This document shows, one piece after another, positions 907 to 31,432 of a stretch of 64,000 bases of DNA. Within the stretch, counting starts at the first letter, position 1. Every line of letters starts with the position of its first letter. The translations under genes were made by a program, and so were the position numbers. Under the pieces are notes generated by a model. It saw nothing but the letters and a program-made list of their open reading frames with translations, ran no database searches and was not told the DNA's origin. The stretch comes from Octopus bimaculoides (taxonomy: Eukaryota). The stretch covers positions 35,446,014 through 35,510,013 of the forward strand of contig NC_068985.1 in assembly GCF_001194135.2 (NCBI RefSeq). The letters are read 5' to 3'.

Positions 907-955
<49 letters not shown>

Positions 956-3835: not shown

Positions 3836-4012
3836 CGTACACAAATAAGAGGAATGACCAGCAAAAGTGGACTCCTATATGTTAGAAATAGATGCCGAAT
3901 CATCTAACCACGAAGAATACTGAGAACATATTCTTTGTGGTTAGATGATTCGGCATCTATTTCTAGCATATAGGAGTCCACTTTTGCTGGTCATTCCTCT
4001 TATTTCAGTATG
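3836..4012. mobile_element. TA-flanked foldback MITE / long hairpin
   Basis: 77-nt arms 3843-3919 and 3929-4005 are reverse complements with 2 mismatches around a 9-nt loop. TA at 3834-35 and 4013-14. Absent from the other array units. Confidence 0.75.
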
Positions 4013-5272: not shown

Positions 5273-5323
5273 ATGTGGAAGAACTTTATGCTAAAGTTAA
5301 CAAACCAAGTGTGAAAACTCATG
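5273..5323 (+). CDS. Micro-exon A2 (51 nt): DVEELYAKVNKPSVKTH
   Basis: tctttctttaatttcttaaAG|atgtggaagaactttatgctaaagttaacaaaccaagtgtgaaaactcatg|GTAAGC. Confidence 0.75.
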
Positions 5324-6791: not shown

Positions 6792-6818
6792 ACAATACAA
6801 GCAGGAAGAAACCTGCTG
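6792..6818 (+). CDS. Candidate micro-exon B2 (27 nt): DNTSRKKPA
   Basis: tatcctaaAG|acaatacaagcaggaagaaacctgctg|GTAAGC; upstream ancestral acceptor mutated as in B1. Confidence 0.4.
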
Positions 6819-7412
6819 GTAAGCATGAATATGTTCAGTTCATTAATATAACTAACAAGTGTTTGAGAGTTATTAACTAACATATTTGACGAAGATTATG
6901 TATCTAAGATTATAGCAGAGGAAAATCTGCAGCTTTTACTGAACCACATGCTGAACTCCATAGATTAGATAAGTGGCTGGTGTAAGGTGACCCACACTGA
7001 GACAATATTATAGGTACCACCATAGCAAGTGAAAGACTTTTAGAAAGAAGGCAATACTGAGAAGCTAAATTTTTGCTATACATAGCAAAGGTAAGGGCAA
7101 AAAAAGCAGAGGTTGCATGTATTGTGCAAGATGAGGATCAGACATGCAAGGGGATCCAAACTGACTAACAGTCTGCCAAATACAAGACAATATATGTAGA
7201 TGTATAGAATAACAATGGCTTCCTCCGTCTTACGTTACAATTTCTTACATATACAGCATTGAACATGTATGTGTATGAAGGAGTGATTGTTTCACATTGA
7301 TATTTATTCCGATAGATTCAATGCTTCATAAATATATTTTGAAAATTATCTATAGTCATATGTCATTTATTTTTTAAGTCTTTAATATTTGTGTTCAATT
7401 TTTATCCTAAAG

Positions 7413-7439
7413 ACAATACAAATAAGAAGAAACCTGCTG
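7413..7439 (+). CDS. Candidate micro-exon B3 (27 nt): DNTNKKKPA
   Basis: aatttttatcctaaAG|acaatacaaataagaagaaacctgctg|GTAAGC. Confidence 0.4.
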
Positions 7440-7988
7440 GTAAGCATCATTATGTTCAGTTCATTAATATAACTAACAAGAGTTTGAGAGGTATTAACTA
7501 ACGTATATGATAATATATATGACAAAAATTATATATCTAACATAGATTATAACAGAAGAAAATCTGCAGCTTTTATGGCACCATGTACTGAACTCTATAG
7601 ATTAGATAAGTGACTGGTGCAAGGTGGCACACACTGAGACAATATTATAGGTAGCATCATAACAAGTGAAAGACTTGTAGAAAGGGGGCAATAAAGAAAA
7701 TATCAAGCAACTAAAAAGAAGCTAAATGTTGACTACACGTAGCGTAAGGAAAGGCAAAATAGCAAAAGTTGGCATATATTGTGCAAGATGAGGATCAGAC
7801 ATGCGAGGTCATCCAAATTGACACAATATTTACAAGGTAGAAGAGACACTGGATAGATGTATAGAATAACAATGCCTTCCTAAGTCTTACTGATACCAAA
7901 CATAAAGAGAGTAAGTTTATTCCAAATAGAAGCAGAAGAGCTACCAGCATTCCAGTTTTACAGTGTTATGACAGCACANNNNNNNNNN

Positions 7989-8286
7989 AGCAAGGTCGTT
8001 GCCAGTGCCGCCAGACTGACTCCCATGCAGATGGCACATAAAAAATACCTTTTTGAGTGTGGTCGTTGCCAGTACCGTGTGACTGACCCTCGTGCCGGTG
8101 GCACGTAAAAGCACCCACTACACTCTCGGAGTGGTTGGTGTTAGAAAGGGTATCCAGCTGTAGAAACTCTGCCAGATCAGATTGGAGCCTGGTGCAGCCT
8201 TCTGGCTTGCCAGTCCTCAATCAAATCGTCCAACCCATGCTAGCATGGAAAGCGGACATTAAGCGATGATGATGATGATGATGATG
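7989..8286 (+). mobile_element. Non-autonomous SINE-like element with (GAT)n tail (RTE-type 3' end)
   Basis: Ends ccaacccatgctagcatggaaagcggacattaagc(gat)n. Same family as 16835-17230 and 20746-21345. It interrupts one array unit. Confidence 0.8.
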
Positions 8287-8938
8287 AGTACTTAGCTAAG
8301 AGTAAGCTCCTATACCAAGCATTTGTGAATTTGGAGAAAGGAACAAACCCTTTCACTTCGTCATACACTATCTGATCTGGTAGCTGCTAAGGAGACTGGA
8401 TTTTGATGAATTGGTTGTGTGAGCCATATTAGCAATGTGCAGAATCACTGTGAGCAAGGTGAGTGATAGCAATGAATTTAGTGTGCATATGGGGGTTTAT
8501 CAAAACTCAATGCTCAGCCTTTCCTGTTTCCTTAGGTCCCCAAGCTAAAAAAGATGTATCTTAGATAACTTTCAAAACACCTGTATGCTGATGATTATGC
8601 TTTTATGTCAGAATCTGTAGAAAAACTGGGTCAGATAGAAATTCCAAACATGAGAGTAAAATCTGCATTTGAAGGGCATTAAATTTAATCTAGCAAAATA
8701 TAGGGAGAATGACTGGACTCAGGTACCATCAGGAAGATGAATGTGCTCTTTATGCTGGAAATGAGCCGGTAGAAATTTCATAAGGTGTCCCCAGTGTAAA
8801 CAATACATACATTCCTGCTTATACTTCTTTTAACATTTATGTACGTGAGGGAGTGAGTGTTTTTCATGAATATTAGTTCTGGAACTTTCAGCACAGCATT
8901 AATATATTTAAATCATATCTTTCTTTAATTTCTTAAAG

Positions 8939-8989
8939 ATGTGGAAGAACTTTATGCTAAAGTTAACAAACCAAGTGTGAAAACTCATG
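8939..8989 (+). CDS. Micro-exon A3 (51 nt): DVEELYAKVNKPSVKTH
   Basis: Identical in nucleotide sequence to A2, with the same AG acceptor and GTAAGC donor. Flanks nearly identical to A2 (recent duplication). Confidence 0.7.
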
Positions 8990-9828
8990 GTAAGCATAAT
9001 TATATTCAGTCCATTCATAAAACTATATAAACTTCAAGGGATATTAACTGATACATATAACACAGACAATCTGCTGGGGTTTCAAGCCGAGATTGTTGGC
9101 TGGTGCAATGTCCCAACTAAAAAACACAAAGTGACACATAAGATACTACTTTGAAAATTACCATAACAGATAACAGACAGGTTTAGAAAGTGTGAATGTA
9201 AGAGAGCATTAAATAGAACCAAAGACTCATGAAGTTCCAGCCTCAGAAACTACACCAATACGAGATGATATGAGAGAATTATGATCAGTGGATCAAGCCA
9301 AGGTGTGTTGTGACAACCATGAGGAACTGGTTTTAATTATGATGGCTTGACAAACCCATGCTAGCATTGACAGTGATTGATCAATGTGATGACAATGGTG
9401 GCAATGATGATGACAAGATAAATTAAGCAAAGAGTTAGCAAATATTTAGGTCAATTTTCCTTGCAATAGAGATAACACTGTAATATAACCTACATAACAC
9501 AAACATTTATAAATGTGCATTTTGCACTACATGTAAACATATATTTTCAGGTGTATTAGCAATTTCTACCTTTATTAATCATTAATTGTACTTTATTTTA
9601 TATCTCAATGTATTTTTATTTGTTTGTTTTTTCTTTTAATTTGGTAATGATAATCTGAGGTAAATAGGGAAAATAATATTATATTACTAATTCCTGCTTA
9701 TGTAGATGTGCATGAGAGGGTGAATGTTTTCCATTAATATTTGTTCTGATACTTTCAATACATCATTTTAAATGTTATATTTTAAATGTTATCTAGAATT
9801 ATATGTCATTATTTTAAAACACCTTAAG

Positions 9829-9855
9829 TCAATAGAAGTAGGAAGAAACCTGCCG
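9829..9855 (+). CDS. Candidate micro-exon B4 (27 nt): VNRSRKKPA
   Basis: ttttaaaacaccttaAG|tcaatagaagtaggaagaaacctgccg|GTAAGC. The Tyr-encoding 5' part is deleted, leaving a clean acceptor and an in-frame 27 nt. Confidence 0.5.
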
Positions 9856-11224
9856 GTAAGCATCATTATGTTCAGTTCATTAATATAACTAACAAGAGTT
9901 TGAGAGGTATTAACTAACATATATGATAATATATATGACAAAAATTATATATCTAACATAGATTATAACAGAAGAAAATCTGCAGCTTTTATGGCACCAT
10001 GTACTGAACTCTATAGATTAGATAAGTGACTGGTACAAGGTGGCACACACTGAGACAATATTTTAGGTAGCATCATAACAAGTGAAAGACTTGTAGAAAT
10101 GGGGCAATAGAGAAAATATCAAATAACTAAAAAGAAGCTAAATGTTGGCTATACGTAGCATAAGGAAAGGCAAAATAGCAAAAGTTGGCATATATTGTGC
10201 AAGATGAGGATCAGACATGCGAGGCCATCCAAATTGACGGACAGTCCGCAAGAGAGAAGACACACTGTTTAGATGTATAGAATAACAATGGCTTTCTCAA
10301 TCCTACTGATGTCAAAAGTAAAGAATGAATTTATTCCAAGTAGAAGCAGAAGAGCTAGCAGCATTCCAGTTTTACAGTATCATGACAGTGCAATTACAGA
10401 ATGAATAGGTAGGAAATGTAGCTGGTCTCTTGAGACTAGATATTTAGAGATTTACAATATTCATGTATCACTGGAAATTTGATTAGCAATAGGATTAACT
10501 TGGATATACCAAGAAGCTGTATCATTGAGATCATATTCCAAATGAAATAACTACAAAGAAGTACTTAGCTAGGAGTAAGCTCCTATATCAAGCATTTGTG
10601 AATTTGGAGAAAAGGACAACCCTTTGATTGAGTAATTCACTATCTGATTTGGTAGATTCTAAGGAAACTGGACTTACATGAACTGGTTGTGTGAGCCATA
10701 AAAACCATGTGCAGAATCACTGTGAGCAAGGTGAGCAATCACAATGAATTTAATGTGCACATGGGGTTTATCAGGAATTAGTGCTCATCCTTTCCCGTTT
10801 ATTTAGGCCTCCAACTTATCAAAAGTGTATTTTAGACAACCTTCAAACACTTGTATGCTGATGACCTAGCTTTTATGACAGAATCTGTAGAAAAATTGGG
10901 TCAGACAGAAATTCCAAACTCGATAGCAAAATCTGCATTTAAAAGATTTTAAATTGAATCTAGTAAAAACACATTTTTTACCCCATAGGAAGAAAGACTG
11001 AACTCATATCCTATCAGGAAAATGCATGTGCTTTTTATGTAGGAAATGAGCAGGTAGAAATTTCATAAGGTGTTCCCAATGTAAAGAATGAATACTTAAG
11101 TTCCTGCTTATACTTCTTCGAACATTTATGTATTAGAGGGAATGAACGTTTCTCATTAATATAAGTTCTGATACTTTCAGCACAGCATTGATATATTTTA
11201 AATAAAATCTTTGATTCCCTAAAG

Positions 11225-11247
11225 ATGTGAATGACCTTTATGCTAAA
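11225..11247 (+). pseudogene. Broken A-type exon copy (DVNDLYAK, donor lost)
   Basis: AG|atgtgaatgacctttatgctaaa, then an abrupt join to spacer sequence (cagtggataaac) with no GTAAG donor. Confidence 0.65.
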
Positions 11248-11672
11248 CAGTGGATAAACAATGAAGATGGTTATAGTGGCAATGATAACGATGGTGGTGA
11301 TAAGAAGAATTAAGCAAAGAGTTAGCAAATATTTAGCCCTTTTTTTCCTTTGAGTAGAAATAAGTTATATAACCTTATATATGAACAAAAAATCATAATT
11401 GTTCATTTTGCAGTATTCCTATCATAAGCTTTACTCTTGTAGATTTTCAAATTTATCTTTAACATTTTCTACCTTTATTCTTCTTTAATTGTACTTTACA
11501 CCATTCGGTGTTTTTTTTTTCTGTTAATTTCATAATAGTATTGAGATGTAAATGGGGAAAATAATATAATATTGTTAATTCCTGTTGTTAGTTCTGTTAC
11601 TTTCAGCACAACATAAATATATTTTAAACAATATCTATAATTGTATGGGATTTATTTTTTAATTTCTTAAAG

Positions 11673-11723
11673 ATGTGAATGATCCTAATGCTAAAGTCAA
11701 AAAACCAAGCAAGAAACCTGAAG
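11673..11723 (+). CDS. Micro-exon A5 (51 nt, Tyr lost): DVNDPNAKVKKPSKKPE
   Basis: ttttttaatttcttaaAG|atgtgaatgatcctaatgctaaagtcaaaaaaccaagcaagaaacctgaag|GTAAGC. Confidence 0.7.
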
Positions 11724-12235
11724 GTAAGCATGATTATACTCAATTTATTAATATAACTAAATATATCTACGGAGGTATTATCTGGCACATGAGAATAAAA
11801 ATGAGAATGTACATACTTACAACATGACAGAAAACTTAAATGCTTATCTGAGTTTTAGAGTGGCCTGTGATAAGTCCCAAATAAACATAAGGTGACATGA
11901 GATGAAGTACTACTGTATACAGCACCATAACAGCTAAGAAACAAGATTGTAAAAACTAGGTGGTAATGAAGTATTATGCTGTACTAGAACAGACTCAAAG
12001 GCTCAATTCCTAGGTAAACTTGGAGAAATCTATGTCAAAATAAGAGGAGCAGTATTTATGAAATATACCAAAAGTATGGCACATACATATATAAATATAG
12101 GTATAAATGCATGTATGTGTGTATATCTGAGGCCTATGTAAAATTGCACCTGCTAAGTCATCATCTACTGCTCCTTTTGCCAATTTCATGCCACCACCCT
12201 CCATTTCATCTCTTCTACTCACTGTTCCATGCTAC

Positions 12236-14760
12236 CTCTTAAAAGATTTGAAAGCATTGGATCTGTGTATATTCAGTATTTAGTACCCTTTTCTATATCT
12301 AACATCCATATTATACTTCTCCTCCCTTCTCTAATTATCTATAGGTCCCAGCCTGAAAGTCCTCTGGAACAGACCAGTTGATTCTCATCAATGCCCAGAA
12401 TTTCATTGAATGTTGTCACACTTACACACCACTAATTCTCTATAGAACACTAAAGTGGAACTTCCAACTGCATTGCCCAATTGACAGGAGACTCTGAGTA
12501 CCTGAAGACACTCTAAGTACTAGGTGCTCTGCTTTAGTCTACTCTTGATCTACAACCACAACTCAGTCAAAGAAATAGGCTGTGGAAGAGCAAATCTGAC
12601 AAACAGCAACCCCACCTTCTTACTAACAAGAAAACATTGGGGATGTCATAGCCTCAATGCAAGTCTGTGTATCAGCAGCCACGACATGCCCAGTCCTCTA
12701 TTCAGCAGGTGTTGACAGCAAATGGAGTGCTTGACCAGTGGAGAATATCCCCTCCAGTTTGGTCACACACAAACTAGGGTGAGGCATGATGGTCAGGCAG
12801 TAATATATGATGTAGACAATATATGCATTCACCACTTCTGCCTGATCTTTCAGAAACAACTTTCTCTCAGCCCATTTCTGAGTGAGATTGGCCACCCTGC
12901 ATTCAAAATGTAAAAGACCTCAGAAAAAATACTGCAATGGAATTTGTCCAATGCACCAGTGATTTTTCTCTATCTGGAGGTCCAGACCAAACCAAAACCC
13001 AAGTAATTTAACTAATCCCTCCATCCAGCATCCCATGACATTATTGGATGGCATGGACTTGCCTCTCCAGATGCCAAACTTTAAGCCCACTGACTGTCCT
13101 CAGTTAATTTTTGCTCCTGTCATTGCTTCATATTCTTTTAGAACAGTGCCAATCAGGTTCATGTTCAACACTATGACAGTGACGTCATAAGCATATGCTG
13201 ACTCAGTTCTCCCACTTCCTGGTTCACATTGGATGTTTTTCGATGCTTCCAGTTTCCACAGTAGTTGCCTTAAAGTCAACACATACAGAATAGATGAGAG
13301 GAGACACCCTTGGCAAGCCAAGTACATGGTGCTGAATAGTTCCAATAAGTAACCAATCATCCAGTCTATTGAGCAGATGTCATTGTACATTGCAGCAATC
13401 CAACCATTGTAAATGGGACTGAAACTGGCCACCATGAGAATAGCCACCAAATATTGGTGGTCGACCCTATTATTGAAGGCTATTGATCAATCCAAATTGA
13501 TCAGGTGTCACCCATGCCAGCTTCTTTATCTACTATGTCTATGATATATCACATAAGGTGGAGGTTGTCATGGACAGAGCTGCTTAGAATGGTACATGTT
13601 TGCACATCCCCAATCAGCTCCTTGACAAGCACCAACTTTTTGATATCACTTTGACCAAATTTTTTTAATCTGCATTCAGCTGCATAATGGGTCTAAAATG
13701 TTCTATTTGATGCCCCTTGTTTGAGTCCTTTCTTAGCAGTGCCACCACTCCTTGACCTACAGAACTAGGAATTCTCCCATTCTGCTGCCAGTTGTGGCAG
13801 ATATATGCTAAGAGGCCACCAAACAAGTCGGGCATATGAAAGTAAATTTCATAGGGCAGGCCATCCAAACCAGGCAATTCGCCCCCCACTTCCATGCAGC
13901 ATCCATGATTGCATCTTGTATTTTTGGGACTGTTGTCAGCCTTTTGTGATGCTCCACCCACCTTAGCAAGAGTGGGTGGAGCATCAAGGTAGGCACTGAA
14001 GATCCATCCTGCATTCCAGACTGCCATTCATCCCAATCAGCTGAGTGAAGTCCTGTTGAAATGCTGCAATCATCTGCTCAGGTTCAAGTACCATGCATCC
14101 ATTTTGGTTCACCAAAAACCAAATTGTGGCTTTGTTGCCACATTGTGCCTCTTCCACTGAGGCCCATCAGATGGTTTTTGTTCCTTCGTTTCTTAGAGCA
14201 TGCATCTTAGCTTTGATAAGGCATTCTTCATGCTTAGTGTTGAAGAACTTGTCCAGGGACAATCTCATCATGAGCACATCAGTTTCAGTGCCTTTCTTAA
14301 GCACCTCTAAGTTACCCTCTATTTTATTTCTTTGTTACTAATGCCTTACTAAACCTAATGGATTCTGCTCTAATTGCCCTTTTCAGAGCAAACTACCAAT
14401 TGTTGTTGAGGACTGACTCCATCAGCGCCTGCTTAACTAATACACAGATCCAGTATGTAGGTTTGGCATGCCAAAAGTGATGCATTCAGCTTCCTGTAGC
14501 CAACTCCCTGCCTATGAGGCCTATTTAGGTCAACTGTGTAGATCGCAAGTTTATGGTCTGTGTAACTGACAATAGCTTTCGGCATTGTCATTGAGTGTTT
14601 TATTGCCTTTTCTTCCATAGAGAATCTTACCTTTACTGTACCATACCTTCTTCCTCTGGTGATGTAACTTTTAATAATCCAGACTGGTCTTAGACATTTT
14701 TCTATGTCTTTTTCTGTAAACATTTTTCCATGCCTTTTTCTGTCATCTGTTCTAATTCTT
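12236..14760 (-). mobile_element. Decayed L1/Tx1-clade LINE (ORF1/EN remnant + RT)
   Basis: Minus-strand peptides LPGLDGLPYEIY..FGGLLA..NWQQNGRIP..GVVALLRKD..FRPI (RT N-terminal) and SYTDHKL..GVGYRKLNASLL (APE endonuclease C-terminal); many stops and frameshifts. Confidence 0.8.
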
Positions 14761-15398
14761 TTGTTTTAATAGTAATTTTTCTATAAGTAACCGTATTTGG
14801 TTTTGTCTTTTGTTGGACACAGAACAGGATTGTTAACATTGTGTCTTACGTGTTTCATTAACATGTATTTTGCTTGTTTTAATTTATCTACCAGGATAGT
14901 GATTTTTTCTCTTGTAATCAGTGGACAATATTAGCAAAGGCAGTGATGGGTGAGTTGTCTGTTGTGTCTTCTTATTGTGGTTGCAGCAAAGGGGAAAAAT
15001 GTTGGCTTGTTGGTCAGACAGTTTTAAATGCACAAATCATTTTCACATCTTTCTTTCTGTAGAGGTTCTTGTTGATTTCATGTTCTTTCTCATTTGTTTA
15101 GTTATTGCTATTTTTAGTATTGTGGTTGTTATTGTTTTGATTGGCACTGACTGTGGTAGTAATGGTGGTGGTGCTGGTGATGCTGATTTGAGCTGGTCAA
15201 AAGCTCTCCAAGTATTTCTAAAATTTTTGGTTGATTCAAAAGTTTACTCAAATATTTTTTTGTATCATCCTTCTGTAAGCTAACAAATCTTTGAGAAGTT
15301 AGCTTCATCTAATTTCAGCCCTTTGGTGTCTAAAACTGTTTATCATTTTCAGACTGACCATGTTTGAAATAACAATAATAATAGTAATAATAATAATG

Positions 15399-15697
15399 AC
15401 AAGAGCACTCAGAGAACACAAACCTCCACCAAGGCAACACCAACGTTTTAAAATATCTGAAATAAACTCAACTGCTCTCAAAAATGAAGTAAAAGACAGG
15501 AAAAATAATCCAGAATCCTTGTCCAGAACCGGATCAATTCCAGAATGTAATCAGTTCACGCCAGTCATGAGGCCAAACATCCTTGAAAGTTTCATCCAAA
15601 TCCATCCAGCAGTTTTTGAGATGACTTGTTCACGGACAAACAAACAATCAAGCATGACTGAAAACAATACCCCCACCTTCGCTTAGGTGGAGGTCAT
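15399..15697 (+). mobile_element. Short non-autonomous element, HINE/Helentron-like ends
   Basis: 5' acaagagcactcagagaacacaaacctccaccaagg. 3' hairpin ccacct-tcgctt-aggtgg. Subterminal inverted repeat acctccacc/ggtggaggt. Sits in an (AAT)-rich tract. Confidence 0.5.
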
Positions 15698-15859
15698 AAT
15701 AATAATTTATACCTCTCAATCTTTCTCTAAATTATTTTGTATGTTCCTAAAATAAAAGGGGGAAAATAATGCAATATTGCTAATTCCCACAATGTTTGTT
15801 TGTACTCATTCTGTGATTAAGTACCTACTGAAGAAATTAAAGGTAAATGAATGACTACT

Positions 15860-16530
15860 GAGGGCCATGCCACCCATGTAGAGAAGCTCAGTCAAGAAGG
15901 TGAAAACCAGCAATGAGTTCAGTGATGAATCTAATGTGCCTGTAGGGATTTATCAGGGCTCAGTTCTCAGCCTTTCCTGTTTATTACAGGCCTCCAAGTC
16001 ATAACTGAGGAATTTGAGGCCAGCTATCATTAGGAACTCTTGTATACTGATGGTTTAGCTCTTACAGCAGAATCTGTTGAAAAACTAGAGCAGAAGTTCT
16101 TGACATGGAAGCTAAACCTAGAATTGAAGAACCTTATATCAAACTTTGAGAAAAATTAGCATTTTAATAAGTATGCAGGAAAGGACTCCGGAGGAATTCT
16201 GTGATGTGAGCCTAGTGTAAAAGGTAAGCAAAGGTGACATGAGATGTAGTGGGGTAATATGTAGGTTAAAGTAGAAGGCAAATTTCATGTACAGAAGGAT
16301 CATTAGAGTAACAAACACTGAAAAGCTCTCAGGATGTAGATTCTCTCAAATGCCCAGATGTCTCCTTAGAAGTAGCTGATAACCTTTGTTACCAATCTGT
16401 CTTAACAGCCAAAAAGGTTGCAAAAAAGTTCAGGGAGTTATCATCTTTGTTGGGAACAAAGGGATTCTCTCCAAAAATGAAGGGCAGATTTTCTAATGTT
16501 GATATGCAGAGTCCAACACTGCACACTTTT
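15860..16530 (+). mobile_element. Decayed RTE LINE RT fragment upstream of exon A6
   Basis: Translates in pieces to GIYQGSVLS..ITEEFE..ELLYTDGLALTAESVEKLEQKFLTWKLNLE..KFRELSSLLGTKGFS. Confidence 0.8.
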
Positions 16531-16720
16531 TTACTTAATTTATGTGATTTCCTAAGGTAAATGAGAAATATAATATAATATTGCTAATTACTACTTATAC
16601 TACTTTATATATGTAAGAGAGTGAATATTTTTTATTAATATTTATCCTGGTACTTTCCATACTACATTAAAATATTTTAAATGTTATTTATAATTATGCC
16701 ATTTTTTTAATTCCTTAAAG

Positions 16721-16771
16721 ATGTGGATGATTTTTATGCTAATGTCAATACACCAAGCATGAAACCTGATG
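16721..16771 (+). CDS. Micro-exon A6 (51 nt): DVDDFYANVNTPSMKPD
   Basis: atttttttaattccttaaAG|atgtggatgatttttatgctaatgtcaatacaccaagcatgaaacctgatg|GTAAAC; phase compatible with the 17941 exon. Confidence 0.75.
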
Positions 16772-16834
16772 GTAAACACGATTATATTCAATTCATTAAT
16801 ATAACTACATTCATTTAGCAACAAGTTAGTAAAT

Positions 16835-17230
16835 CATCATCGTTTAACGTCCGTTTTCCATTCTTGCATGGGTTGGACGGTTTGACTGAGGACTAGCAAG
16901 CCAGTAGGTTGCATTAGGCTCCAATCTAATCTGGCAAGATTTCTACAGCTGAATGCCCTAGCTAATGCCAACCAATCCGACAGTGTAGTCGGTGCTTTTT
17001 ATGTACCACTGGAATGGAAGCCAGTCAGGCAGCACTGGCATCAACCATGTTCGGATGGTGCTTTTTATGTGTCACCTTGCACAGGTGCCAGTCAGGGGCA
17101 CTGACATTGACCATGTTCGGATGGTGCATTTTATGTGCCACTGGCACAGGGAGCCAGTCAGGCAGCACTGGCATTGACTCACCCTAAATGGTGCTTACTA
17201 CGTGCCACCAGCACGGGTGCCAGTCAGGTG
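16835..17230 (-). mobile_element. SINE-like element, (GAT)n-tailed family with internal ~70-bp repeats
   Basis: catcatcatcgtttaacgtccgttttccattcttgcatgggttggacgg is the reverse-complemented tail; repeated ggtgctttttatgtg(t/c)cac units. Confidence 0.8.
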
Positions 17231-17940
17231 GCACTGGCATTGGCTACAACTCCGATTTCCATTTTGATTTTCATTTTAATTTTCTGTGTGTAGAATAAGC
17301 AGCTTAATGTTCCATGTATGAACATATTTACATAAAACTTTGAAAATTCCATTGCATATATAATAAACATCTTGCAGGAATTCACATTAACTCCGATACT
17401 TTACACATTTATTTATTCTTACTAGTTCATAAACTAACATTATGTTCACTAGACAAGAAAATCAAAGTATAGAAGAGATTTACAATGGTGAATTTCACAT
17501 CTTGAGCAACTACTGTTGTTGAGTACCCACCATCAGTCCTGCTTATGGACATCTCTTACATGAAAGTAATGTTGAAAAATAGTGAACAGATTCTCTTAAT
17601 GGTAATTTTAGTACTTTTAAATATCAATAAAATATTTGAGCGACAGAAATAGTAGAAGGCAATACTAAATACTTGGGCATATTCAATTTAGTCCCACTGC
17701 ATTCTGAGCTCAAATCCCATTGATATCAGTTTTGACTTTCATCTTTCTCTGATCAACATAATAAATATCAATGGTATTCTAGATTGACTGTCTCCTAATT
17801 TGTATCTACTGTCAAAAATTGCTATTTTTTAATGCTGCTTATATGATTGCTTTTCTTTTTGATAAGTTTTGTATTAATAGTATGTGTTATGTTTACTATA
17901 TTTTATATTCAACTGTTATATTCTACATGTCTAAAAACAG

Positions 17941-17990
17941 AAGATGGTAGCATGAATGACAATTATGAGAGCAACAATCAAAGTAATGAG
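17941..17990 (+). CDS. Penultimate coding exon (50 nt, phase 1-0): EDGSMNDNYESNNQSNE
   Basis: ctaaaaacAG|aagatggtagcatgaatgacaattatgagagcaacaatcaaagtaatgag|GTAAAT. Bridges phase-1 A exons to the phase-0 terminal exon without a stop. Confidence 0.7.
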
Positions 17991-18337
17991 GTAAATCCAT
18001 AAATATATTTTAATTTTCTTTTATAGTGGTTATATCGAGATATTATCTTCAAAAAATTATTTAAAGATGTGTTTTTTACTGTCCTTTTCTTAAAGGTAGA
18101 TAATAGAGCAGTTGAGATAAGTTTAAATTATTCCTTCATATTGTTATTTTTGCATTTAATACTGTATGTGAAAACCAAACAGTGTTTTATTGATTTTTCA
18201 TATTTCTTTAATAATGATGTATTAAAAATGTATACTTCTAATATGTTTAAATGTCTGTTTATAAATTTAAAAATGTTCTGATATATAATTGTTTATACTT
18301 GTAGTATGTCATTGTGTTTTTTTTTAATTCAATTTAG

Positions 18338-18463
18338 CCTGAATCTGTTCAAGAATGTAATTATGCAGAACTTGAGTTTAGAAACGATCCTGGACCAAGC
18401 AAACCAGTACCAAAACCTAAAGAAGAAGAAACTATTTATGCTGATCTAATATTGGACTGTTAA
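18338..18463 (+). CDS. Terminal coding exon: PESVQECNYAELEFRNDPGPSKPVPKPKEEETIYADLILDC* (ITIM/ITSM-like tyrosine pair)
   Basis: T-rich tract + tttAG at 18336-37, 41 open codons then TAA, exon-like composition in very AT-rich surroundings; ATTAAA at 18508-18513. Confidence 0.8.
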   Translation, partial: PESVQECNYAELEFRNDPGPSKPVPKPKEEETIYADLILDC

Positions 18464-20450
18464 TCTAAATATTTTGCCATTTTTTAATCATGTTGATATA
18501 TGTACCAATTAAAGCCACTCTACATTTTATTCACACTCTTAAACAGATGCTAGTAGTTTACAAAGTACAGATAATCAGAGTACTTCTTTCATTTATAAAA
18601 CAGTGAACACTTCCATTTACATGTCCAAGAAGAAAAATACCTTCTCAAGGCAAGTCTTCATTCACCAGTACTATCTTGTCCTTTGCCTTTCACTGGTCTT
18701 TGTGCTCCTGTTTTTTTACCTGCTTTTTGTAAACCATGAGTGTGCTAACTTTATATTATTCCCATCTGAAACCACCTGACATTCTCACATTCCTCTTCTT
18801 TCCAATTCTATTGTGTCTCATCTACCATAAAATTTGATAGACATCAGCTACTTCTCTTCCTCTATTACTATGCATTCCCTTCATCATATAACTTGCAGCA
18901 GTTTAAATTAACCAAGTGCCAATAATAACCCTTCAGATATACCATTCTCCCTGTTCCTAAGCCTAAGAAGCTATTAGCTGATATTTTTCTCTTTACACAA
19001 ACAAATATAGCCAAATATAAGGAAAACATTTAAATCTTTTACATCTTTTTTGTATCTGATACTCAAAGCTTTATTTTTTTATAATTATTTAAAATTTTGA
19101 TAATGTGTTTTGTGCTCCATAACCTTTTTGGAAGAATGGATATCACAGTCCTTGGTACTGCTTAGTCTATTCTTCAAACGATTTCAAATAATGTGATAAC
19201 TATTGACTGTGGTTACACTGGTTTTGTGTATCAAAAATCATTTCTTTCTCTTTAGATATATTTGTCAGTTTATTTCTAGAAACAATACATGGACCTGCAA
19301 TTATAGTACACTGTTACAGATATTTATTTTTGGTAAGATTTTTTAAAAATGTATATTTTATAAAGTAACAAGTTTTCAGTAGTGCTTTTGGTAGCATTAT
19401 AAGAACACAATACATTAAAGATTTTGGACAAGATTCTAGATCTTATTTATGATTCATATGTTCCTATTCTATAAAGTGTGTTAAGTAATATACTGAATTT
19501 TTTTTTAATGCAAATTGTAATGTTTCCAAGATTGATACAAAGATTCACTTTTGTAGTAATAAATAGCCAAGTTAATTAACCTCAGCACATGCCTTTATAA
19601 AGTTATCCATTATAACACATTAGTCACCCTTAACAAGTGAGCATTGCATGTAGGTCTTTACTAGCTTTATAGATTTGGACTAAATATCTAAAAATACCAT
19701 TCCATTAAGAGTTTCTATGTCATATGCAGCAACTGCATTGACAAATTCTTATTCTTTTATTCTTATAGATGTCTACAAATAAGCATTTGCCAGCATGGAA
19801 GGCAGGCATTAAACTATGATGATTAATGAAGTAAATCCAGTTAAAATTTTGTTTTTTTGTTTTCCAATGTGAATCATTATAAGACAAACACAATATGGCT
19901 GTTAATTTGTTTATTTTTGGTACTTATGTGAGTTTGCTCTCCAGTTGTCTATAACTAGGCAACAGTTATGACTAATTTTAATTTGTTGATGAAGTTATCT
20001 TTTTTTTTCTTGTTTTTTTTTGTTGTTTATTTTATTCATAAAACTATATGCTGATTAAATTTGTTTCTGATGGGGTTTGGACCCCATTAAGCAAATTTTT
20101 TTCAAATCATTTCCAGTTTTTGAAATTTGCCTCATCAAACTTGAAATCTTGATCTTATTGCAGAAATTTTATATTATTTACTTTTTGTAATTTTACTTAC
20201 ACAAATGTATTCAGATTTCTTTCTGTCACATTCATGTGTGTGTGTGTGCATTCTTGAGCAAAACTATTTCACATTGGTCTGTGATCATTTTGACATTTGA
20301 AGTGTTGCACGCTTCTGCACTTGTGCAGGCAATGTTGATTTGATAGAGGAAGTGAATAACTATGCAGCATAAATATTTAATTATTATAAACAGATCATTT
20401 GTGGAACAAAAACTGAACATTCATGTCATCTTCAATGGGAGATTCCATTG

Positions 20451-20745: not shown

Positions 20746-21345
20746 ATCATCGTCATCATCATCGTTTAACGTCCGCTTTCCATGCTAACATGGGTTGGAC
20801 GATTTGACTGAGGACTGGTGGACCAGAAGGCGACACCAGGCTCCAATCTGATTTGGCAGAGTTTCTACAGCTGGATGCCCTTCCTAACGCCAACCACTCC
20901 GGGAGTGTATTGGGTGCTTTTACGTGCCACCGGCACGAGGGCCAGTCAGGTAGGTACTGGCAACGGCCATGCTCGAAATGGTGTATTTTATGTGCCACCT
21001 GCACAGGGCCAGTCCAGGGGCACTGGCAACAATCTCACTCGGATGTCTTACTGGCAAAGGCCACGCTCGAAATGGTGTATTACATGTCACCTGCACAGGG
21101 CCAGTCCATCGGCACTGGCAACGATCTCACTCGAATGTCTTTTCACGTGCCAGGAAAGCAACGTTGGTAACGATCCACGGCCACACTCGAAATGGTGTAT
21201 TTTACGTGTCACCTGCACAGGAGCCAGTCCATCAGCACTGGTAACGATCTCGCTCGAATGACTTTTCATGTGCCACTGGCACAAGTGCCAGGAAGGCGAT
21301 GTTGATAACGATCACGCTGGTGCTATTTATGTGCCACCGGCACTT
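20746..21345 (-). mobile_element. SINE-like element, (GAT)n-tailed family, with an expanded internal ~70-bp tandem repeat
   Basis: catcatcgtcatcatcatcgtttaacgtccgctttccatgc, followed by about 6 copies of ..ctcgaaatggtgtattttatgtgccacctgcacagggccagtc..ggcactggcaacg.. Confidence 0.85.
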
Positions 21346-27500: not shown

Positions 27501-29570
27501 CAAGACAGAGAAGTCCTTTTACTACAAATCAGCATATTCCCTAAATTGTGATAACACCAATCTACAATCCATGTGATGCTTCCCTAGACTCAGGGTCTGC
27601 AGCATGATGTTGTAGCGCTGTATGGAACCAGTCGTCTTGGTTTACTCCATGTTATTGGATAACTCCATGTTATTGGATAATTCCATGCAGTGCCAGTTAG
27701 TGGGTCACGGATTGTGCAACCGTTTCTCCACTATAAACTTCCTAGCACAATCGTTTCTTACATCGTCTACAATTATGTTTTGAAGTCCTATGGCAATGAG
27801 TGCTGAATAGCAGGGGCAGGCTTAAGCTGGCTGCAAGCCCTTAGTTCTGCACTTGCATACAGGTGGTCTCAACAAGATGGTCATTTGCTTTCTGGACAAG
27901 CAGCCAAGACAATCGGTCCTACTGAGAAGACTGAGTAGCCTTGTTTAGGGATGCGCTGCTCACCTCAAGATGGGGAGAGGCCAAGAAAATGTGGCCTAAA
28001 AAACGCCTGCTCACACACCTAATCTGGATGGATAACTGCGTCCGTCGGAATGACTTTCAAATGCAGTTGAAACATTAAAAGTAAAATTCAACCCTTGAAT
28101 GTTGCAACCTGGAATTCTGGACTTTACTGGATGACACCAACACCTCCCTCCCAATCACCGCACTGCCCTTGTTGCGGTGGAACTCCTACACTACAACATT
28201 GACGTTGCCGCCCTCAGTGAAACTCACATTCTTGAGGAGAGGTCACTTACGGAGGTAGGTGAGGGATACACTTTCTTCTGGAAAGGTCACCCTGCTGGCT
28301 CCTCCTGCATGCATGGCATTGCTTTTGCTGTCAGATCAGCTTTGGTCCCATCGCTAACCGAATCTCCAGTTGGCATCAGTGAACGGCTCATGACGATGCA
28401 CATCCCACTAACTCATGGTCGTTCGGCCACACTGCTTAGTGCTCATGCACCAACTCTCACATCAGCCAAAGAGGACAAAGATGCCTTCTACGCTTCCCTG
28501 CGTGCTGCTCTGCAGCGCATTCCACACGAAGACAAACTCTTACTTTTAGGCGACTTTAACGCAGGAATGGGATCAAACCACCACATTTAGCATAGTATTC
28601 TCGGTTGGCACGGCAGTGGAAACACCAACTCAAACCGCCTCCGCCTCGCACTTTGTTCTGAATTTTCCTTTTGCATCACAAACGCAATGTTCCAACTTGC
28701 TGAGAAACACAAAACAACATCGATGCACCCAGATCCGAGCACCTGATTGACTATGCCATCACACAGACCTGCAAGATGTGAAAATCACCACAGTTATATG
28801 TGGTGCCAACTGCTGGACTGACCATCGCTTGGTCCGATGCCGGCTACGCTTGCAAATTCGTCCTCCTATCCATAAGCAAAAACTGAAGCAGATGCTAAAT
28901 GTTGTAACTCTGCAATCGTATGAAGTCCGCCAGAAACTGGCAGTAACACTGGAACAAAAGTTTGCCGAGCTCCCTGATGCCAAGCTTTGACCAACTGATA
29001 GACAAACTCTGACGTCAGAGTGGGACACTCTAGCAACCATTATTATCACTAATGCTGCGAAAGATATACTTGGTGTTTAGAATAGACGTCATCAACCACT
29101 CACTCCTACGTGGAATGAATGCTGCACACAACAGACATCTCTGTCAACCAGCAGCAGCCAACCACAGACAATGGACAAGCCTCTGCTCTGATGTCCAGCG
29201 AAAACTTAGAACCATGCAGAACAACTGGTGGAAGACTAAATCACAAGAAATACAAGGCTATGCTGACGCAAGCAACATCCAAGCTTTCTACGAATCCATA
29301 AAGACTACATACGATCCAATTAGAGGATCCTTCTGCCCCGTATGAAACAATGATTCACATCACTCATCAAGGACCGAGATGGCATTTCAACACCCTCCTC
29401 AACCGTAGAAACCCCATAGACCCTTCTTTTCTTGACAACATCTCTACACTACACCCATCGATTGTGTAGATGAGAAATTTAATCTGCGATAAATGACCTC
29501 AAGTTGAGGTCTCTGCCAGCTGAGATCTTGAGGTATGGTGGTCGGTTTTCTAGACCCGCATTCATGCTTT

Positions 29571-31432
29571 TGTAGTAACGCCGTGCGCATGCGTAGTCTC
29601 ACGCATGCGTGGAATTCAACAACCAAGCTTTCCCGCTTTGATCGATCTCTTTCTTGCTGGCCAGCGATTGAGCATGGACGTGTCTAGCTCGCTCCATCTT
29701 TCGAACTCACGCTAGACAGCTCACATCAACATACCGATGTCCCAACAACCATGTTTCTCACACACCGAAGACGTCTCAACAAACAAGATTAAAGATGTAT
29801 ATTTTCCAACCATGAATAAATATTGTTTGTGTTGATAGTTTGGAGTTCAGCGTTGCCATTAATTTCTAATTTAATATAGGAAAGTCAGGTGTACATCTAA
29901 TGATGTATAACCCACTTTCCTATAAAGTGGTGACCCCGACGTGATACAGACACGCAGCCCGCTGAGCTACAATAACAACTATTTCTATATAACTGATAAC
30001 CAACATTCTTATAAAGTGGTGACCCCGACTAAGAAAAAACGCGGCCATGGATTCTGGACACCAACCTATAACTGGTGACCCCGACTAAAGAACAAATGCG
30101 GCCATGGAGACTGAACTACCAAGCAACGATGACCACCAACATCTCCAACCATAGTCAACACGACTTACTATGTACACCAAACTAAACCACCGCGGCAAAT
30201 CTCTCTATTCGATTCTGTTAGGTGACTTAGCTTCACCACGATAATAAACAGACAAGAATTACANNNNNNNNNNNNNNNNNNNNNNNNNNNNNNNNNNNNN
30301 NNNNNNNNNNNNNNNNNNNNNNNNNNNNNNNNNNNNNNNNNNNNNNNNNNNNNNNNNNNNNNNNNNNNNNNNNNNNNNNNNNNNNNNNNNNNNNNNNNNN
30401 NNNNNNNNNNNNNNNNNNNNNNNNNNNNNNNNNNNNNNNNNNNNNNNNNNNNNNNNNNNNNNNNNNNNNNNNNNNNNNNNNNNNNNNNNNNNNNNNNNNN
30501 NNNNNNNNNNNNNNNNNNNNNNNNNNNNNNNNNNNNNNNNNNNNNNNNNNNNNNNNNNNNNNNNNNNNNNNNNNNNNNNNNNNNNNNNNNNNNNNNNNNN
30601 NNNNNNNNNNNNNNNNNNNNNNNNNNNNNNNNNNNNNNNNNNNNNNNNNNNNNNNNNNNNNNNNNNNNNNNNNNNNNNNNNNNNNNNNNNNNNNNNNNNN
30701 NNNNNNNNNNNNNNNNNNNNNNNNNNNNNNNNNNNNNNNNNNNNNNNNNNNNNNNNNNNNNNNNNNNNNNNNNNNNNNNNNNNNNNNNNNNNNNNNNNNN
30801 NNNNNNNNNNNNNNNNNNNNNNNNNNNNNNNNNNNNNNNNNNNNNNNNNNNNNNNNNNNNNNNNNNNNNNNNNNNNNNNNNNNNNNNNNNNNNNNNNNNN
30901 NNNNNNNNNNNNNNNNNNNNNNNNNNNNNNNNNNNNNNNNNNNNNNNNNNNNNNNNNNNNNNNNNNNNNNNNNNNNNNNNNNNNNNNNNNNNNNNNNNNN
31001 NNNNNNNNTCATTCCTTCAATTTGTACATTGCATGCATGTATCACACGAGTGTACATTTCATTTCTTTCATTTTCTTTGTGTGTGTTTGTGCTACATCTT
31101 GTGGGTGGTTTTCAGTGGCCATCCTGCCTCAGGCTTTCCAACAAAAAAATTATATTATCGTGCGTTCCACACTGGCGAGGGGAGCCCTGTAGTAACGCCG
31201 TGCGCATGCGTAGTCTCACGCATGCGTGGAATTCAACAACCAAGCTTTCCCGCTTTGATCGATCTCTTTCTTGCTGGCCAGCGATTGAGCATGGACGTGT
31301 CTAGCTCGCTCCATCTTTCGAACTCACGCTAGACAGCTCACATCAACATACCGATGTCCCAACAACTATGTTCTCACACACAGAAGGCGCCTCAACAAAC
31401 AAGATTAATGATGTATAACCCACTTTCATATA
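29571..31432 (+). mobile_element. Small (TRIM-sized, Gypsy-type) LTR retrotransposon
   Basis: Direct repeats 29571-29924 and 31188-31432 start TGTAGTAACG. PBS 3 nt after the 5' LTR; purine tract ggcgaggggag just before the 3' LTR. The interior includes a ~745-N gap. Confidence 0.85.
29928..29945 (+). promoter_or_regulatory. Primer-binding site complementary to the tRNA-Trp 3' end
   Basis: TGGTGACCCCGACGTGAT is the complement of ..ATCACGTCGGGGTCACCA, the 3' end of eukaryotic tRNA-Trp; partial copies at 30017-30029 and 30073-30085. Confidence 0.8.

What the first reader, a model, noticed from the sequence alone, without database searches (positions are those of the whole stretch)
18338..18463. 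Terminal exon with an ITIM/ITSM-like tyrosine pair spaced 25 residues apart
Seen: CNYAEL (Tyr9 of the exon) and TIYADL (Tyr34) near the C-terminus, separated by a Pro/Lys-rich linker. Known: TxYxx(V/I) is the ITSM of SLAM-family receptors, and tandem motifs with similar spacing (human PD-1 Y223/Y248) engage the two SH2 domains of SHP-1/SHP-2. Inference: an inhibitory-type tail in a mollusc, possibly an immune or recognition receptor. The first motif has Cys at -2 and the second ends in Leu, so neither is strictly canonical.
Basis: partly seen in the sequence, partly recalled or inferred. Interest (0 to 1): 0.7.

Follow-up and report, generated by a model that had tools for sequence, protein, structure and literature searches.

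The report
Probable receptor-tail exon with paired tyrosines
A 41-codon reading frame that looks like the genuine last coding exon of an unidentified animal gene carries two tyrosine motifs arranged much like the phosphatase-docking tail of the vertebrate checkpoint receptor PD-1. No transcript, related sequence or outer receptor domain could be found to prove this.

Summary
Window 18338-18460 (+) reads PESVQECNYAELEFRNDPGPSKPVPKPKEEETIYADLILDC, followed by a stop, with Tyr9 and Tyr34 25 residues apart.

A loose YxxL/I/V pair is common by chance: 18 of 385 comparable random ORFs have one. Other features are not chance-like:
- **Codon signal.** The ORF has the strongest codon-position GC periodicity of 692 comparable ORFs (GC1/2/3 = 0.59/0.37/0.12).
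- **Splice context.** It follows a 98th-percentile polypyrimidine tract plus AG and a 20%-GC intron-like stretch.
- **Motif 1.** It matches the published extended PD-1 consensus core Y(A/G)(E/V)L(D/E)F, including Phe at pY+5.
- **Motif 2.** It is TxYAxL with Ile at -1.
- **Joint expectation.** About 1e-6 per window.

A transmembrane-like ORF ends in a phase-compatible donor 347 nt upstream.

Neither motif meets the strict ITIM or ITSM definitions. No ectodomain exon lies in the window. No homologue was found in any database, but controls show the source organism is poorly covered there. The taxon ("mollusc") could not be verified.

Best reading (about 0.4): a real terminal exon encoding a bipartite docking site for a tandem-SH2 phosphatase. 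ITIM-bearing mollusc receptors are already described, so interest is moderate.

The parts
18313..18337 (+). Putative 3' splice site: pyrimidine-rich tract tgtgtttttttttaattcaatttag ending in AG. The TAG is also the in-frame stop that opens the ORF.
   Evidence: Sequence. Pyrimidine fraction 0.74, the 98th percentile of all AG sites in the window. No other AG in the last ~30 nt (read).
18338..18460 (+). Putative terminal coding exon of 41 codons: PESVQECNYAELEFRNDPGPSKPVPKPKEEETIYADLILDC.
   Evidence: Translation. GC1/GC2/GC3 = 0.585/0.366/0.122, the highest periodicity of 692 ORFs. Amino-acid composition ranks 13th of 822. Unique within the window.
18356..18379 (+). Motif 1, CNYAELEF (Tyr9 = 18362-18364). 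ITIM-like, with the core Y-A-E-L-E-F.
   Evidence: Matches Y(A/G)(E/V)L(D/E)F of the PD-1 ITIM-region consensus. This 6-mer pattern is expected 0.016 times in the window's six-frame translation and occurs once, here. Cys at -2 fails the ITIM definition (S/I/V/L)xYxx(I/V/L).
18380..18430 (+). Pro/Lys-rich then acidic linker, RNDPGPSKPVPKPKEEE.
   Evidence: Best local match to the SIRPalpha linker NLPKGKKPAPQAAE between its two tyrosines (peptide).
18431..18454 (+). Motif 2, TIYADLIL (Tyr34 = 18437-18439). ITSM-like: T at -2, I at -1, A at +1, L at +3, L at +5.
   Evidence: ITSM is TxYxx(V/I), so Leu at +3 is outside the strict definition. Ile at -1 is the residue class c-Src and c-Abl prefer, and Ala at +1 is preferred by c-Abl.
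18461..18463 (+). TAA stop codon.
18508..18513 (+). ATTAAA, a possible polyadenylation signal 45 nt after the stop. A canonical AATAAA lies at 19558-19563.
   Evidence: Such hexamers are common in AT-rich DNA, so this is weak evidence.
17991..18337 (+). Putative last intron (347 nt), from donor GAG|GTAAAT to acceptor TTTAG|CC.
   Evidence: GC is 20% here, against 35% in the exon and 34% downstream. The donor scores 3.5 bits on a generic PWM and is phase 0, matching the acceptor phase.
17867..17990 (+). Hypothetical penultimate exon: (x)FVLIVCVMFTIFYIQLLYSTCLKTEDGSMNDNYESNNQSNE, a transmembrane-like stretch followed by a polar juxtamembrane segment. The 5' end is uncertain (17867, 17881 or 17941).
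   Evidence: The open frame 17847-17990 is in phase with the terminal exon. Maximum 19-residue Kyte-Doolittle hydropathy is 3.06, reached by only 13 of 612 ORFs. The acceptor at 17867 has a 98th-percentile pyrimidine tract. Against: there is no codon periodicity here (D = 0.06), T-rich introns mimic hydrophobic ORFs, and there is no basic cluster after the hydrophobic stretch.

Best explanation
18338-18463 is a genuine 3'-terminal coding exon of an unidentified, probably single-pass membrane protein of an invertebrate. Its upstream exons lie mostly outside the window.

The exon encodes a disordered C-terminal tail with two tyrosine motifs, CNYAELEF and TIYADLIL, 25 residues apart.

Inferred mechanism:
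1. After ligand-driven clustering, a Src- or Abl-type kinase phosphorylates both tyrosines.
2. The doubly phosphorylated tail then binds the two SH2 domains of one SHP-2/Corkscrew-type phosphatase at once. One motif supplies affinity and the other displaces the autoinhibitory N-SH2 domain, as in the two-step model for PD-1.
3. This recruits and activates the phosphatase at the membrane and dampens tyrosine-kinase signalling.

Shown here: the sequence, its coding-like statistics, its splice context and its motif architecture. Inferred: transcription, membrane anchorage, phosphorylation, the binding partner and the sign of the signal.
For: - **Coding signal.** Highest codon-position GC periodicity of 692 comparable ORFs. 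G1 in the top 2.6% and GC3 in the bottom 0.3%. Protein-like amino-acid composition, rank 13 of 822, with most higher ranks being microsatellite artefacts.
- **Splice context.** 98th-percentile pyrimidine tract plus AG, a 20%-GC intron-like stretch upstream, and a phase-matched donor at 17991 behind a transmembrane-like ORF. That donor is the nearest of only 14 phase-0 candidates in 9.3 kb.
- **Motif 1.** It matches 6 of 8 positions of the PD-1 consensus (I/V)(D/E)Y(A/G)(E/V)L(D/E)F. Phe at pY+5 is reported there to contribute to binding by both SHP-2 SH2 domains. Ala at pY+1 is the cartilaginous-fish PD-1 state and favours SHP-1 recruitment.
- **Motif 2.** It has Thr at -2, which that paper attributes to a C-SH2 preference, and Ile at -1, which fits the c-Src and c-Abl preference.
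- **Spacing and overall similarity.** The 25-residue spacing equals that of PD-1 Y223/Y248 (peptide). SIRPalpha has a 24-residue spacing with a similar Pro/Lys linker. The local alignment score to the PD-1 tail is 45; only 0.12% of shuffles reach it, and it is the best of 1,090 window ORFs.
- **Joint chance.** The two extended motifs at this spacing in one open frame are expected about 1e-6 times per window and about 0.06 times per 3 Gb.
- **Precedent.** An oyster IgSF receptor with two ITIMs binds an SH2 phosphatase.
Against: - There is no transcript evidence.
- No homologue was found. The word-indexed search found no candidate. The exhaustive phmmer search of 1.84 billion representatives found nothing at E<=1e-3. 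The metagenome scan and the PDB search were empty.
- No paralogue exists in the window.
- No Pfam domain was found in + strand open segments of 9560-18460, so no ectodomain or signal peptide is known.
- Cys at -2 of motif 1 and Leu at +3 of motif 2 fall outside the strict ITIM and ITSM definitions.
- The transmembrane-like ORF has no coding periodicity and lacks a basic stop-transfer cluster.
- The PD-1 consensus was looked up after the sequence had been seen, so the joint probability is partly post hoc and assumes independent residues.
- A second frame (18282-18446) is also open across the exon.
Confidence: 0.4

Rival explanations
1. Chance open reading frame in intronic or intergenic AT-rich DNA. 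The tyrosine motifs have no function.
For: - The 'exon' is just a 41-codon stop-to-stop ORF, and 582 ORFs of at least 41 codons exist in the window.
- 4.7% of comparable ORFs carry a loose YxxL/I/V pair at this spacing.
- No protein anywhere matches it.
- No recognisable upstream domain exon was found.
- The surroundings are dominated by transposon debris.
Against: - It ranks 1st of 692 ORFs for codon-position periodicity.
- The acceptor pyrimidine tract is at the 98th percentile.
- The extended motif pair is expected about 1e-6 times per window.
- The database negatives are weak. Control transposon ORFs from the same window found nothing closer than 64% identity, and exact window ORFs are absent from the collection, so the source organism seems uncovered.
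Confidence: 0.25
2. Real terminal exon, but the two Y-A-[D/E]-L motifs act as YxxPhi tyrosine-based sorting signals. Unphosphorylated, they would bind the mu2 subunit of AP-2 and drive endocytosis or trafficking of the membrane protein. They would not act as phosphotyrosine docking sites.
For: - Both motifs fit YxxPhi with Leu at +3. YxxPhi recognition by AP-2 mu2 is established knowledge, and many invertebrate adhesion receptors use such signals.
- Failure of the strict ITIM and ITSM definitions leaves this generic reading open.
Against: - A sorting signal does not need two copies 25 residues apart, a Phe at +5, a Thr at -2, or an acidic run with Ile at -1 typical of tyrosine-kinase substrates.
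- The in-register similarity to the PD-1 bipartite module is unexplained by sorting alone.
- The two functions are not mutually exclusive.
Confidence: 0.15
3. Real terminal exon with phosphotyrosine docking, but for a different partner. Candidates are an inositol phosphatase (SHIP), a Csk- or SAP-type adaptor, or a Syk/Shark-type tandem-SH2 kinase. The output could then be activating or a switch rather than SHP-mediated inhibition.
For: - The oyster receptor CgNCAM1 with two ITIMs was reported to bind SHIP2 rather than an SHP.
- A TxYxx(V/I)-like motif is by definition a switch motif with several possible partners.
- pYxxL is also the half-site of ITAMs (established knowledge).
Against: - The Tyr-to-Tyr spacing of 25 lies outside the ITAM range, which has 6-12 residues between the two YxxL/I half-sites (established knowledge).
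- Ala at +1, Leu at +3 and Phe at +5 fit the SHP-class preferences quoted.
- SAP-type switch binding needs a hydrophobic -1, which motif 2 has but motif 1 does not.
Confidence: 0.15

Closest known systems
PD-1 (PDCD1) cytoplasmic ITIM-ITSM module of jawed vertebrates
   Same: - Two tyrosines 25 residues apart near the C-terminus, with a Pro-rich linker.
- The first motif shares Y-(A/G)-E-L-(D/E)-F, including Phe at pY+5. The second shares T at -2, Y, A at +1 and aliphatic residues at +3 and +4.
- An ungapped 31-residue alignment keeps both tyrosines in register.
   Different: - Position -2 of motif 1 is Cys, not Ile or Val, and -1 is Asn, not Asp or Glu.
- Motif 2 has Ile, not Glu, at -1, Asp, not Thr, at +2, Leu, not Ile, at +3 and Leu, not Phe or Tyr, at +5.
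- The tail ends 7 residues after Tyr34.
- No IgV exon was found upstream.
- The similarity (shuffle frequency about 1e-3) is motif-level and not evidence of homology.
- Transposon content points to an invertebrate source.
SIRPalpha (SHPS-1) bis-tyrosine SHP-2 activating peptide DITYADLNLPKGKKPAPQAAEPNNHTEYASIQTS
   Same: A xTYADL / TIYADL-type motif, a Pro/Lys-rich linker and a 24-25 residue Tyr-Tyr spacing. The SIRPalpha peptide has been shown experimentally to activate SHP-2 when doubly phosphorylated (alignment).
   Different: The order of the motifs is reversed: YADL comes first in SIRPalpha and second here. SIRPalpha has four tyrosines in its full tail (from memory). No sequence homology beyond the motifs.
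PZR (MPZL1) ITIM pair VIYAQL / VVYADI
   Same: Both motifs are of the pY-A-x-(L/I) type, as in the peptides used to pull down SHP-2.
   Different: Both PZR motifs meet the strict ITIM definition (Val at -2), while neither motif here does. The spacing in PZR was recalled from memory only (about 22 residues) and was not checked.
Oyster CgNCAM1, a mollusc IgSF receptor with two cytoplasmic ITIMs
   Same: It shows that tails of this kind exist and signal through an SH2-domain phosphatase in a mollusc.
   Different: [quoted passage not shown] Here the ectodomain is unknown and no sequence comparison was possible, because the motif sequences are not given in the text that was read.

Membership tests
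ITIM | Sequence (S/I/V/L)-x-Y-x-x-(I/V/L) | tested here: not met
   Definition. Motif 1 is C-N-Y-A-E-L, with Cys at -2 and +3 correct. Motif 2 is T-I-Y-A-D-L, with Thr at -2.
ITSM | Sequence T-x-Y-x-x-(V/I) | tested here: not met
   Definition. Motif 2 has Thr at -2 but Leu at +3. Motif 1 lacks the Thr.
ITIM/ITSM receptors | The motif lies in the cytoplasmic tail of a transmembrane receptor | tested here: inconclusive
   A transmembrane-like ORF (Kyte-Doolittle 3.06, reached by 13 of 612 ORFs) with a phase-0 donor lies 347 nt upstream. It shows no coding periodicity, and no ectodomain or signal-peptide exon was found in 9560-18460.
ITIM/ITSM receptors | Tyrosine phosphorylation and recruitment of SHP-1, SHP-2 or SHIP through SH2 domains | not testable with these tools
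   This needs biochemistry. Only indirect cues exist: Ile at -1 and Ala at +1 fit Src/Abl-type kinase preferences, and Phe at pY+5 fits the SHP-2 SH2 preference quoted.
PD-1-type bipartite SHP-2 module | (I/V)(D/E)Y(A/G)(E/V)L(D/E)F followed about 25 residues later by (T/V)EYATIx(F/Y) | tested here: inconclusive
   Motif 1 matches 6 of 8 positions and motif 2 matches 3 of 8 exactly, with conservative Leu for Ile at +3 and Leu for Phe/Tyr at +5. The spacing of 25 is met. This is resemblance in working parts, not membership of the PD-1 gene family.
PD-1 gene family (orthology) | An IgV ectodomain exon and detectable sequence homology | tested here: not met
   No V-set or other Pfam hit upstream. 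No protein hit at E<=1e-3 among 1.84 billion representatives.
ITAM | Two YxxL/I half-sites separated by 6-12 residues | tested here: not met
   There are 21 residues between the end of YAEL and the Tyr of YADL, and the Tyr-to-Tyr distance is 25. The ITAM spacing rule is from established knowledge.
YxxPhi sorting signal | Tyr-x-x-bulky hydrophobic residue in a cytoplasmic tail | tested here: met
   YAEL and YADL both fit. The pattern is generic, occurring about 1.3% per residue position in random ORFs here, so meeting it carries little weight.
Protein-coding terminal exon | Acceptor site, open frame with coding statistics, in-frame stop, transcript support and conservation | tested here: inconclusive
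   The acceptor, coding statistics and stop are met. Transcript support and conservation could not be tested because no related sequence is retrievable.

The most novel reading that the evidence does not exclude
An invertebrate, possibly cephalopod, membrane protein carries a complete PD-1-like two-tyrosine module: Y-A-E-L-E-F, then 25 residues, then T-x-Y-A-x-L. The module would engage both SH2 domains of the SHP-2/Corkscrew orthologue. In that case the 'checkpoint-type' two-step mechanism of phosphatase recruitment and activation, including the pY+5 Phe contact, either predates vertebrates or has arisen convergently in a lineage with a complex nervous and immune system.
Probability: 0.2. Interest if true: 0.6.

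Novelty: new member of a known kind. Interest (0 to 1): 0.4.

Why it matters
Inhibitory receptors that recruit SH2-domain phosphatases are central to vertebrate immune and neural self-recognition. Outside vertebrates only a handful are characterised, for example oyster CgNCAM1 and the allorecognition receptors of Botryllus and Hydractinia.

A tail matching the extended SHP-2-binding determinants of PD-1, and not just the minimal ITIM, would give a concrete and testable handle on whether the tandem-SH2 'two-site' activation mechanism operates in invertebrates.

As it stands the finding is one small unannotated exon. Its value depends entirely on obtaining the full-length transcript.

Tried and rejected
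1. **Homology searches on the exon.** The word-indexed search of 5.8 billion proteins with the 41-aa exon found no candidate. Exhaustive phmmer of the spliced 82-aa transmembrane-plus-tail model against 1.84 billion representatives found 0 hits at E<=1e-3. PDB sequence search found 0 hits at E<=10. The metagenome contig scan gave 148 pattern matches, none confirmed.
2. **Coverage controls.** A reverse-transcriptase ORF and a transposon-like ORF from the same window hit nothing closer than 64% (full-length) to 72% (partial) identity, and the named hits were coral, sponge, arachnid and insect proteins. Five exact window ORFs are not in the collection. Two contig look-ups gave no organism names. 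The negatives in point 1 are therefore weak, and the taxon stays unverified.
3. **Search for ectodomain exons.** Pfam on all + strand open segments of at least 32 aa in 9560-18460 gave only a sub-threshold DUF4834 hit on the hydrophobic stretch. The first 9.5 kb was only inspected by eye and consists of repeat copies.
4. **Paralogues in the window.** None were found.
5. **Decayed reverse-transcriptase fragment.** I considered whether TIYADL is a decayed reverse-transcriptase 'YADD' box, because upstream LINE fragments read ...KHLYADD.... I rejected this: there is no nucleotide or protein similarity beyond YAD.
6. **Non-coding RNAs.** Rfam and tRNA scans of the window found nothing.
7. **ITAM reading.** Rejected on spacing.
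8. **Literature.** Searches for the exact peptides found nothing relevant, and the PD-1 paper's supplements hold no YAEL or IYADL match.
9. **Further exact-ORF look-ups.** These could in principle find the same locus in other assemblies, but I did not run them because made success unlikely.

Full report
**1. Observation**

Window 18338-18463 on the + strand translates to PESVQECNYAELEFRNDPGPSKPVPKPKEEETIYADLILDC followed by TAA. Tyr9 is codon 18362-18364 and Tyr34 is codon 18437-18439, so they are 25 residues apart. The linker between them, RNDPGPSKPVPKPKEEE, is rich in Pro and Lys and then acidic. The reverse strand is closed by stops.

The TAG at 18335-18337 serves both as the upstream in-frame stop and as the AG of the putative acceptor. 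Exon status is therefore an inference that needs its own evidence.

**2. Is it more than chance?**

The window is AT-rich eukaryotic DNA (33.5% GC) with ten N gaps. It holds 582 stop-free frames of at least 41 codons. A loose YxxL/I/V pair 20-32 residues apart occurs in 18 of 385 random ORFs of 41-60 codons. The tyrosine pair alone therefore proves nothing.

Several independent properties do set this ORF apart:
- **Codon-position periodicity.** GC at codon positions 1/2/3 is 0.585/0.366/0.122. The periodicity index (GC1+GC2)/2-GC3 is 0.354, the highest of all 692 stop-free ORFs of 35-70 codons in the window (mean -0.007, sd 0.10). G at position 1 is in the top 2.6% and GC3 in the bottom 0.3%. 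This is the pattern expected of selected coding sequence in an AT-biased genome. It does not depend on local GC content.
- **Amino-acid composition.** It ranks 13th of 822 for resemblance to real proteins. Most of the ORFs above it are microsatellite translations.
- **Splice acceptor.** The 19 bases before the AG are 74% pyrimidine, the 98th percentile of all AG sites in the window.
- **Intron-like flank.** The 347 nt upstream (17991-18337) have 20% GC, against 35% in the ORF and 34% downstream.
- **Specific motif.** YA[DE]L occurs only five times in 74,054 random-ORF residues, and two of those are in this ORF.

I conclude that a real coding exon is more likely than not, at roughly 0.7. This rests on intrinsic evidence only.

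**3. Surroundings and gene structure**

Region 17243-20446 is single-copy within the window. Positions 1-17242 are largely copies of repeat families and LINE fragments.

The nearest phase-compatible donor upstream of 18338 is GAG|GTAAAT at 17991. It is one of only 14 phase-0 donor candidates with at least 12 open codons in the 9.3 kb upstream, and several of the others sit in repeat copies.

The frame behind that donor is open for 48 codons: LLFFLISFVLIVCVMFTIFYIQLLYSTCLKTEDGSMNDNYESNNQSNE. It contains an 18-19 residue hydrophobic stretch with a Kyte-Doolittle maximum of 3.06, a level reached by only 13 of 612 ORFs. A possible acceptor at 17867 has a 98th-percentile pyrimidine tract.

Spliced to the terminal exon, this would give a transmembrane helix followed by a 64-residue cytoplasmic tail. 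That part is a hypothesis, for three reasons:
- The hydrophobic segment shows no codon periodicity.
- T-rich introns readily mimic hydrophobic ORFs.
- There is no basic cluster after the hydrophobic stretch.

No Pfam domain is encoded by any + strand open segment of at least 32 aa between 9560 and 18460. No Ig-like exon is visible further upstream. The ectodomain, if there is one, lies beyond the window.

Possible poly(A) signals lie at 18508 (ATTAAA) and 19558 (AATAAA). These are weak evidence in AT-rich DNA.

**4. External evidence**

No external evidence could be obtained:
- The 41-aa peptide shares no three 5-mers with any of 5.8 billion clustered proteins.
- An exhaustive phmmer search with the 82-aa spliced model found nothing at E<=1e-3 among 1.84 billion representatives.
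- PDB sequences, metagenome contigs and the window itself hold no relative.

These negatives carry little weight. Two transposon-derived ORFs from the same window, which should have many near-identical copies in the source genome, found nothing closer than 64% (full-length) to 72% (partial) identity. Their named hits were coral, sponge, pseudoscorpion, spider and insect proteins. Five exact window ORFs are absent from the collection.

The source organism therefore seems not to be covered.

**5. What the motifs resemble**

By the published definitions, ITIM is (S/I/V/L)xYxx(I/V/L) and ITSM is TxYxx(V/I). Neither motif here is a strict member: motif 1 has Cys at -2 and motif 2 has Leu at +3.

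The resemblance to a working SHP-2 docking module is nevertheless closer than the minimal motifs suggest. A 2025 comparison of PD-1 from sharks to humans gives the conserved sites as (I/V)(D/E)Y(A/G)(E/V)L(D/E)F and (T/V)EYATIx(F/Y). It reports four relevant points:
- Phe at pY+5 contributes to binding by both SHP-2 SH2 domains.
- Thr at -2 favours the C-SH2 domain.
- Ala at pY+1 of the ITIM is the cartilaginous-fish state.
- Ala at that position promotes SHP-1 recruitment.

Here, motif 1 (CNYAELEF) matches Y, A, E, L, E and F. Motif 2 (TIYADLIL) matches T, Y and A, with aliphatic residues at +3, +4 and +5.

Aligned without gaps to the native human PD-1 tail peptide, NYAELEFRNDPGPSKPVPKPKEEETIYADLI pairs with DYGELDFQWREKTPEPPVPCVPEQTEYATIV, and both tyrosines stay in register. 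The local alignment score is 45. Only 0.12% of shuffles reach it, and it is the best of 1,090 window ORFs.

The pattern Y[AG][EV]L[DE]F is expected 0.016 times in the window's six-frame translation and occurs once, here. Together with [TV]xYAx[ILV] 23-27 residues downstream in an unbroken frame, the expectation is about 1e-6 per window and about 0.06 per 3 Gb. That calculation assumes independent residues and was made after I had seen the sequence, so it is indicative only.

Three further comparisons fit:
- The SIRPalpha peptide that activates SHP-2 when doubly phosphorylated (DITYADL...24...EYASI) has the same YADL motif type, a similar Pro/Lys linker and nearly the same spacing.
- PZR uses VIYAQL and VVYADI.
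- The run EEETIY, with Ile at -1 and Ala at +1, fits the Src and Abl kinase preferences.

**6. Mechanism**

My best-supported explanation has confidence of about 0.4. This is the terminal exon of a single-pass membrane protein. Its two tyrosines, once phosphorylated by a Src- or Abl-type kinase, together bind the tandem SH2 domains of an SHP-2/Corkscrew-type phosphatase. This would follow the two-step model for PD-1, in which one site gives affinity and the other releases N-SH2 autoinhibition, and it would recruit and activate the phosphatase.

Only the sequence-level facts are shown. Every functional step is inferred.

The rivals are:
- A chance ORF (0.25).
- A real exon whose YxxPhi motifs are AP-2 sorting signals (0.15).
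- A real phosphotyrosine docking site for another partner, such as SHIP, which binds the oyster receptor CgNCAM1, or an adaptor or kinase with a different signalling sign (0.15).

An ITAM reading fails on spacing. A decayed reverse-transcriptase YADD box is ruled out by the lack of any similarity to the LINE fragments in the window.

**7. Comparison, novelty and verdict**

In working terms the tail resembles the PD-1, SIRPalpha and PZR class of bis-tyrosine SHP-docking tails. It is not a member of the PD-1 gene family, because there is no IgV exon and no detectable homology. It also fails the strict ITIM and ITSM definitions.

ITIM-bearing IgSF receptors are already described in molluscs and other invertebrates. 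If real, this would therefore be a new member of a known kind. Its most interesting aspect is the match to the extended SHP-2 determinants.

Interest is moderate (0.4). The motif architecture is unusually good, but the finding rests on a single unannotated 41-codon exon without transcript, orthologue or domain context. The decisive steps are transcript mapping, cross-species comparison and phosphopeptide-SH2 binding assays.

Noticed in passing
window 18599-18736 (+): The ORF NSEHFHLHVQEEKYLLKASLHSPVLSCPLPFTGLCAPVFLPAFCKP has the second-highest codon-position GC periodicity of the 692 ORFs (D = 0.283). It lies in the same reading frame as the finding, 136 nt after its stop, with several stops in between. 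A pyrimidine tract plus CAG acceptor sits at 18603. It could be an alternative 3' exon, or an effect of the strongly C/T-rich stretch at 18575-19024 (GC skew down to -0.53).
   Followed up: partly
window 28135-32914 (+): A LINE-type retrotransposon. An endonuclease/exonuclease/phosphatase domain lies at 28135-28587 and a reverse-transcriptase domain at 31419-31805. It is interrupted by the N gap at 30264-31008. Nearly the same minus-strand ORF start appears on both sides of the gap (29447-29683 and 31115-31300), which suggests an assembly duplication around the gap.
   Followed up: partly
window 50159-53385 (+): A second LINE-type element, with RVT_1 at 50690-51343 and a weak zf-RVT match at 51553-52179. 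The peptide GSLHSKCDTDRLYVP is repeated on both sides of the 10-N gap at 51451-51460, probably a scaffolding artefact. The best database relatives are only 64% (full-length) to 71% (partial) identical, including a coral protein.
   Followed up: partly
window 33427-34065 (+): A 213-aa open frame with no Pfam match. It has about 400 relatives at around 60% identity among unnamed or 'hypothetical' proteins of arachnids, sponges and insects. It is probably the C-terminal part of a widespread DNA-transposon protein. It also contains a YADL by chance.
   Followed up: partly
window 8087-8266 (+), 16840-17101 (both strands), 20762-21260 (both strands): Copies of a GC-rich (about 50%) repeat family, translating to ...APTTLSEWLVLERVSSCRNSARSDWSLVQPSG.... 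It stands out against the AT-rich background and gives spuriously 'coding-like' ORFs on both strands. It is likely a SINE or similar element. No tRNA or Rfam match was found in the window.
   Followed up: partly
window 654-11000 (+), e.g. 4903-5013, 8569-8679, 10836-10949, 16034-16156: Several degraded copies of one retroelement family lie on the + strand upstream of the finding. Each keeps the reverse-transcriptase box ...KHLYADD(L/S/Y)AFM.... This resembles TIYADL only superficially.
   Followed up: yes
window 52391-52767, 54311-55184, 40014-40260, 43527-43770: Long microsatellite and low-complexity tracts: an AT-rich trinucleotide tract, a (TATC)-like tract reading IYLSIYLS, and GA/CA dinucleotide tracts. 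They produce long artefactual ORFs that top naive coding-potential rankings.
   Followed up: no
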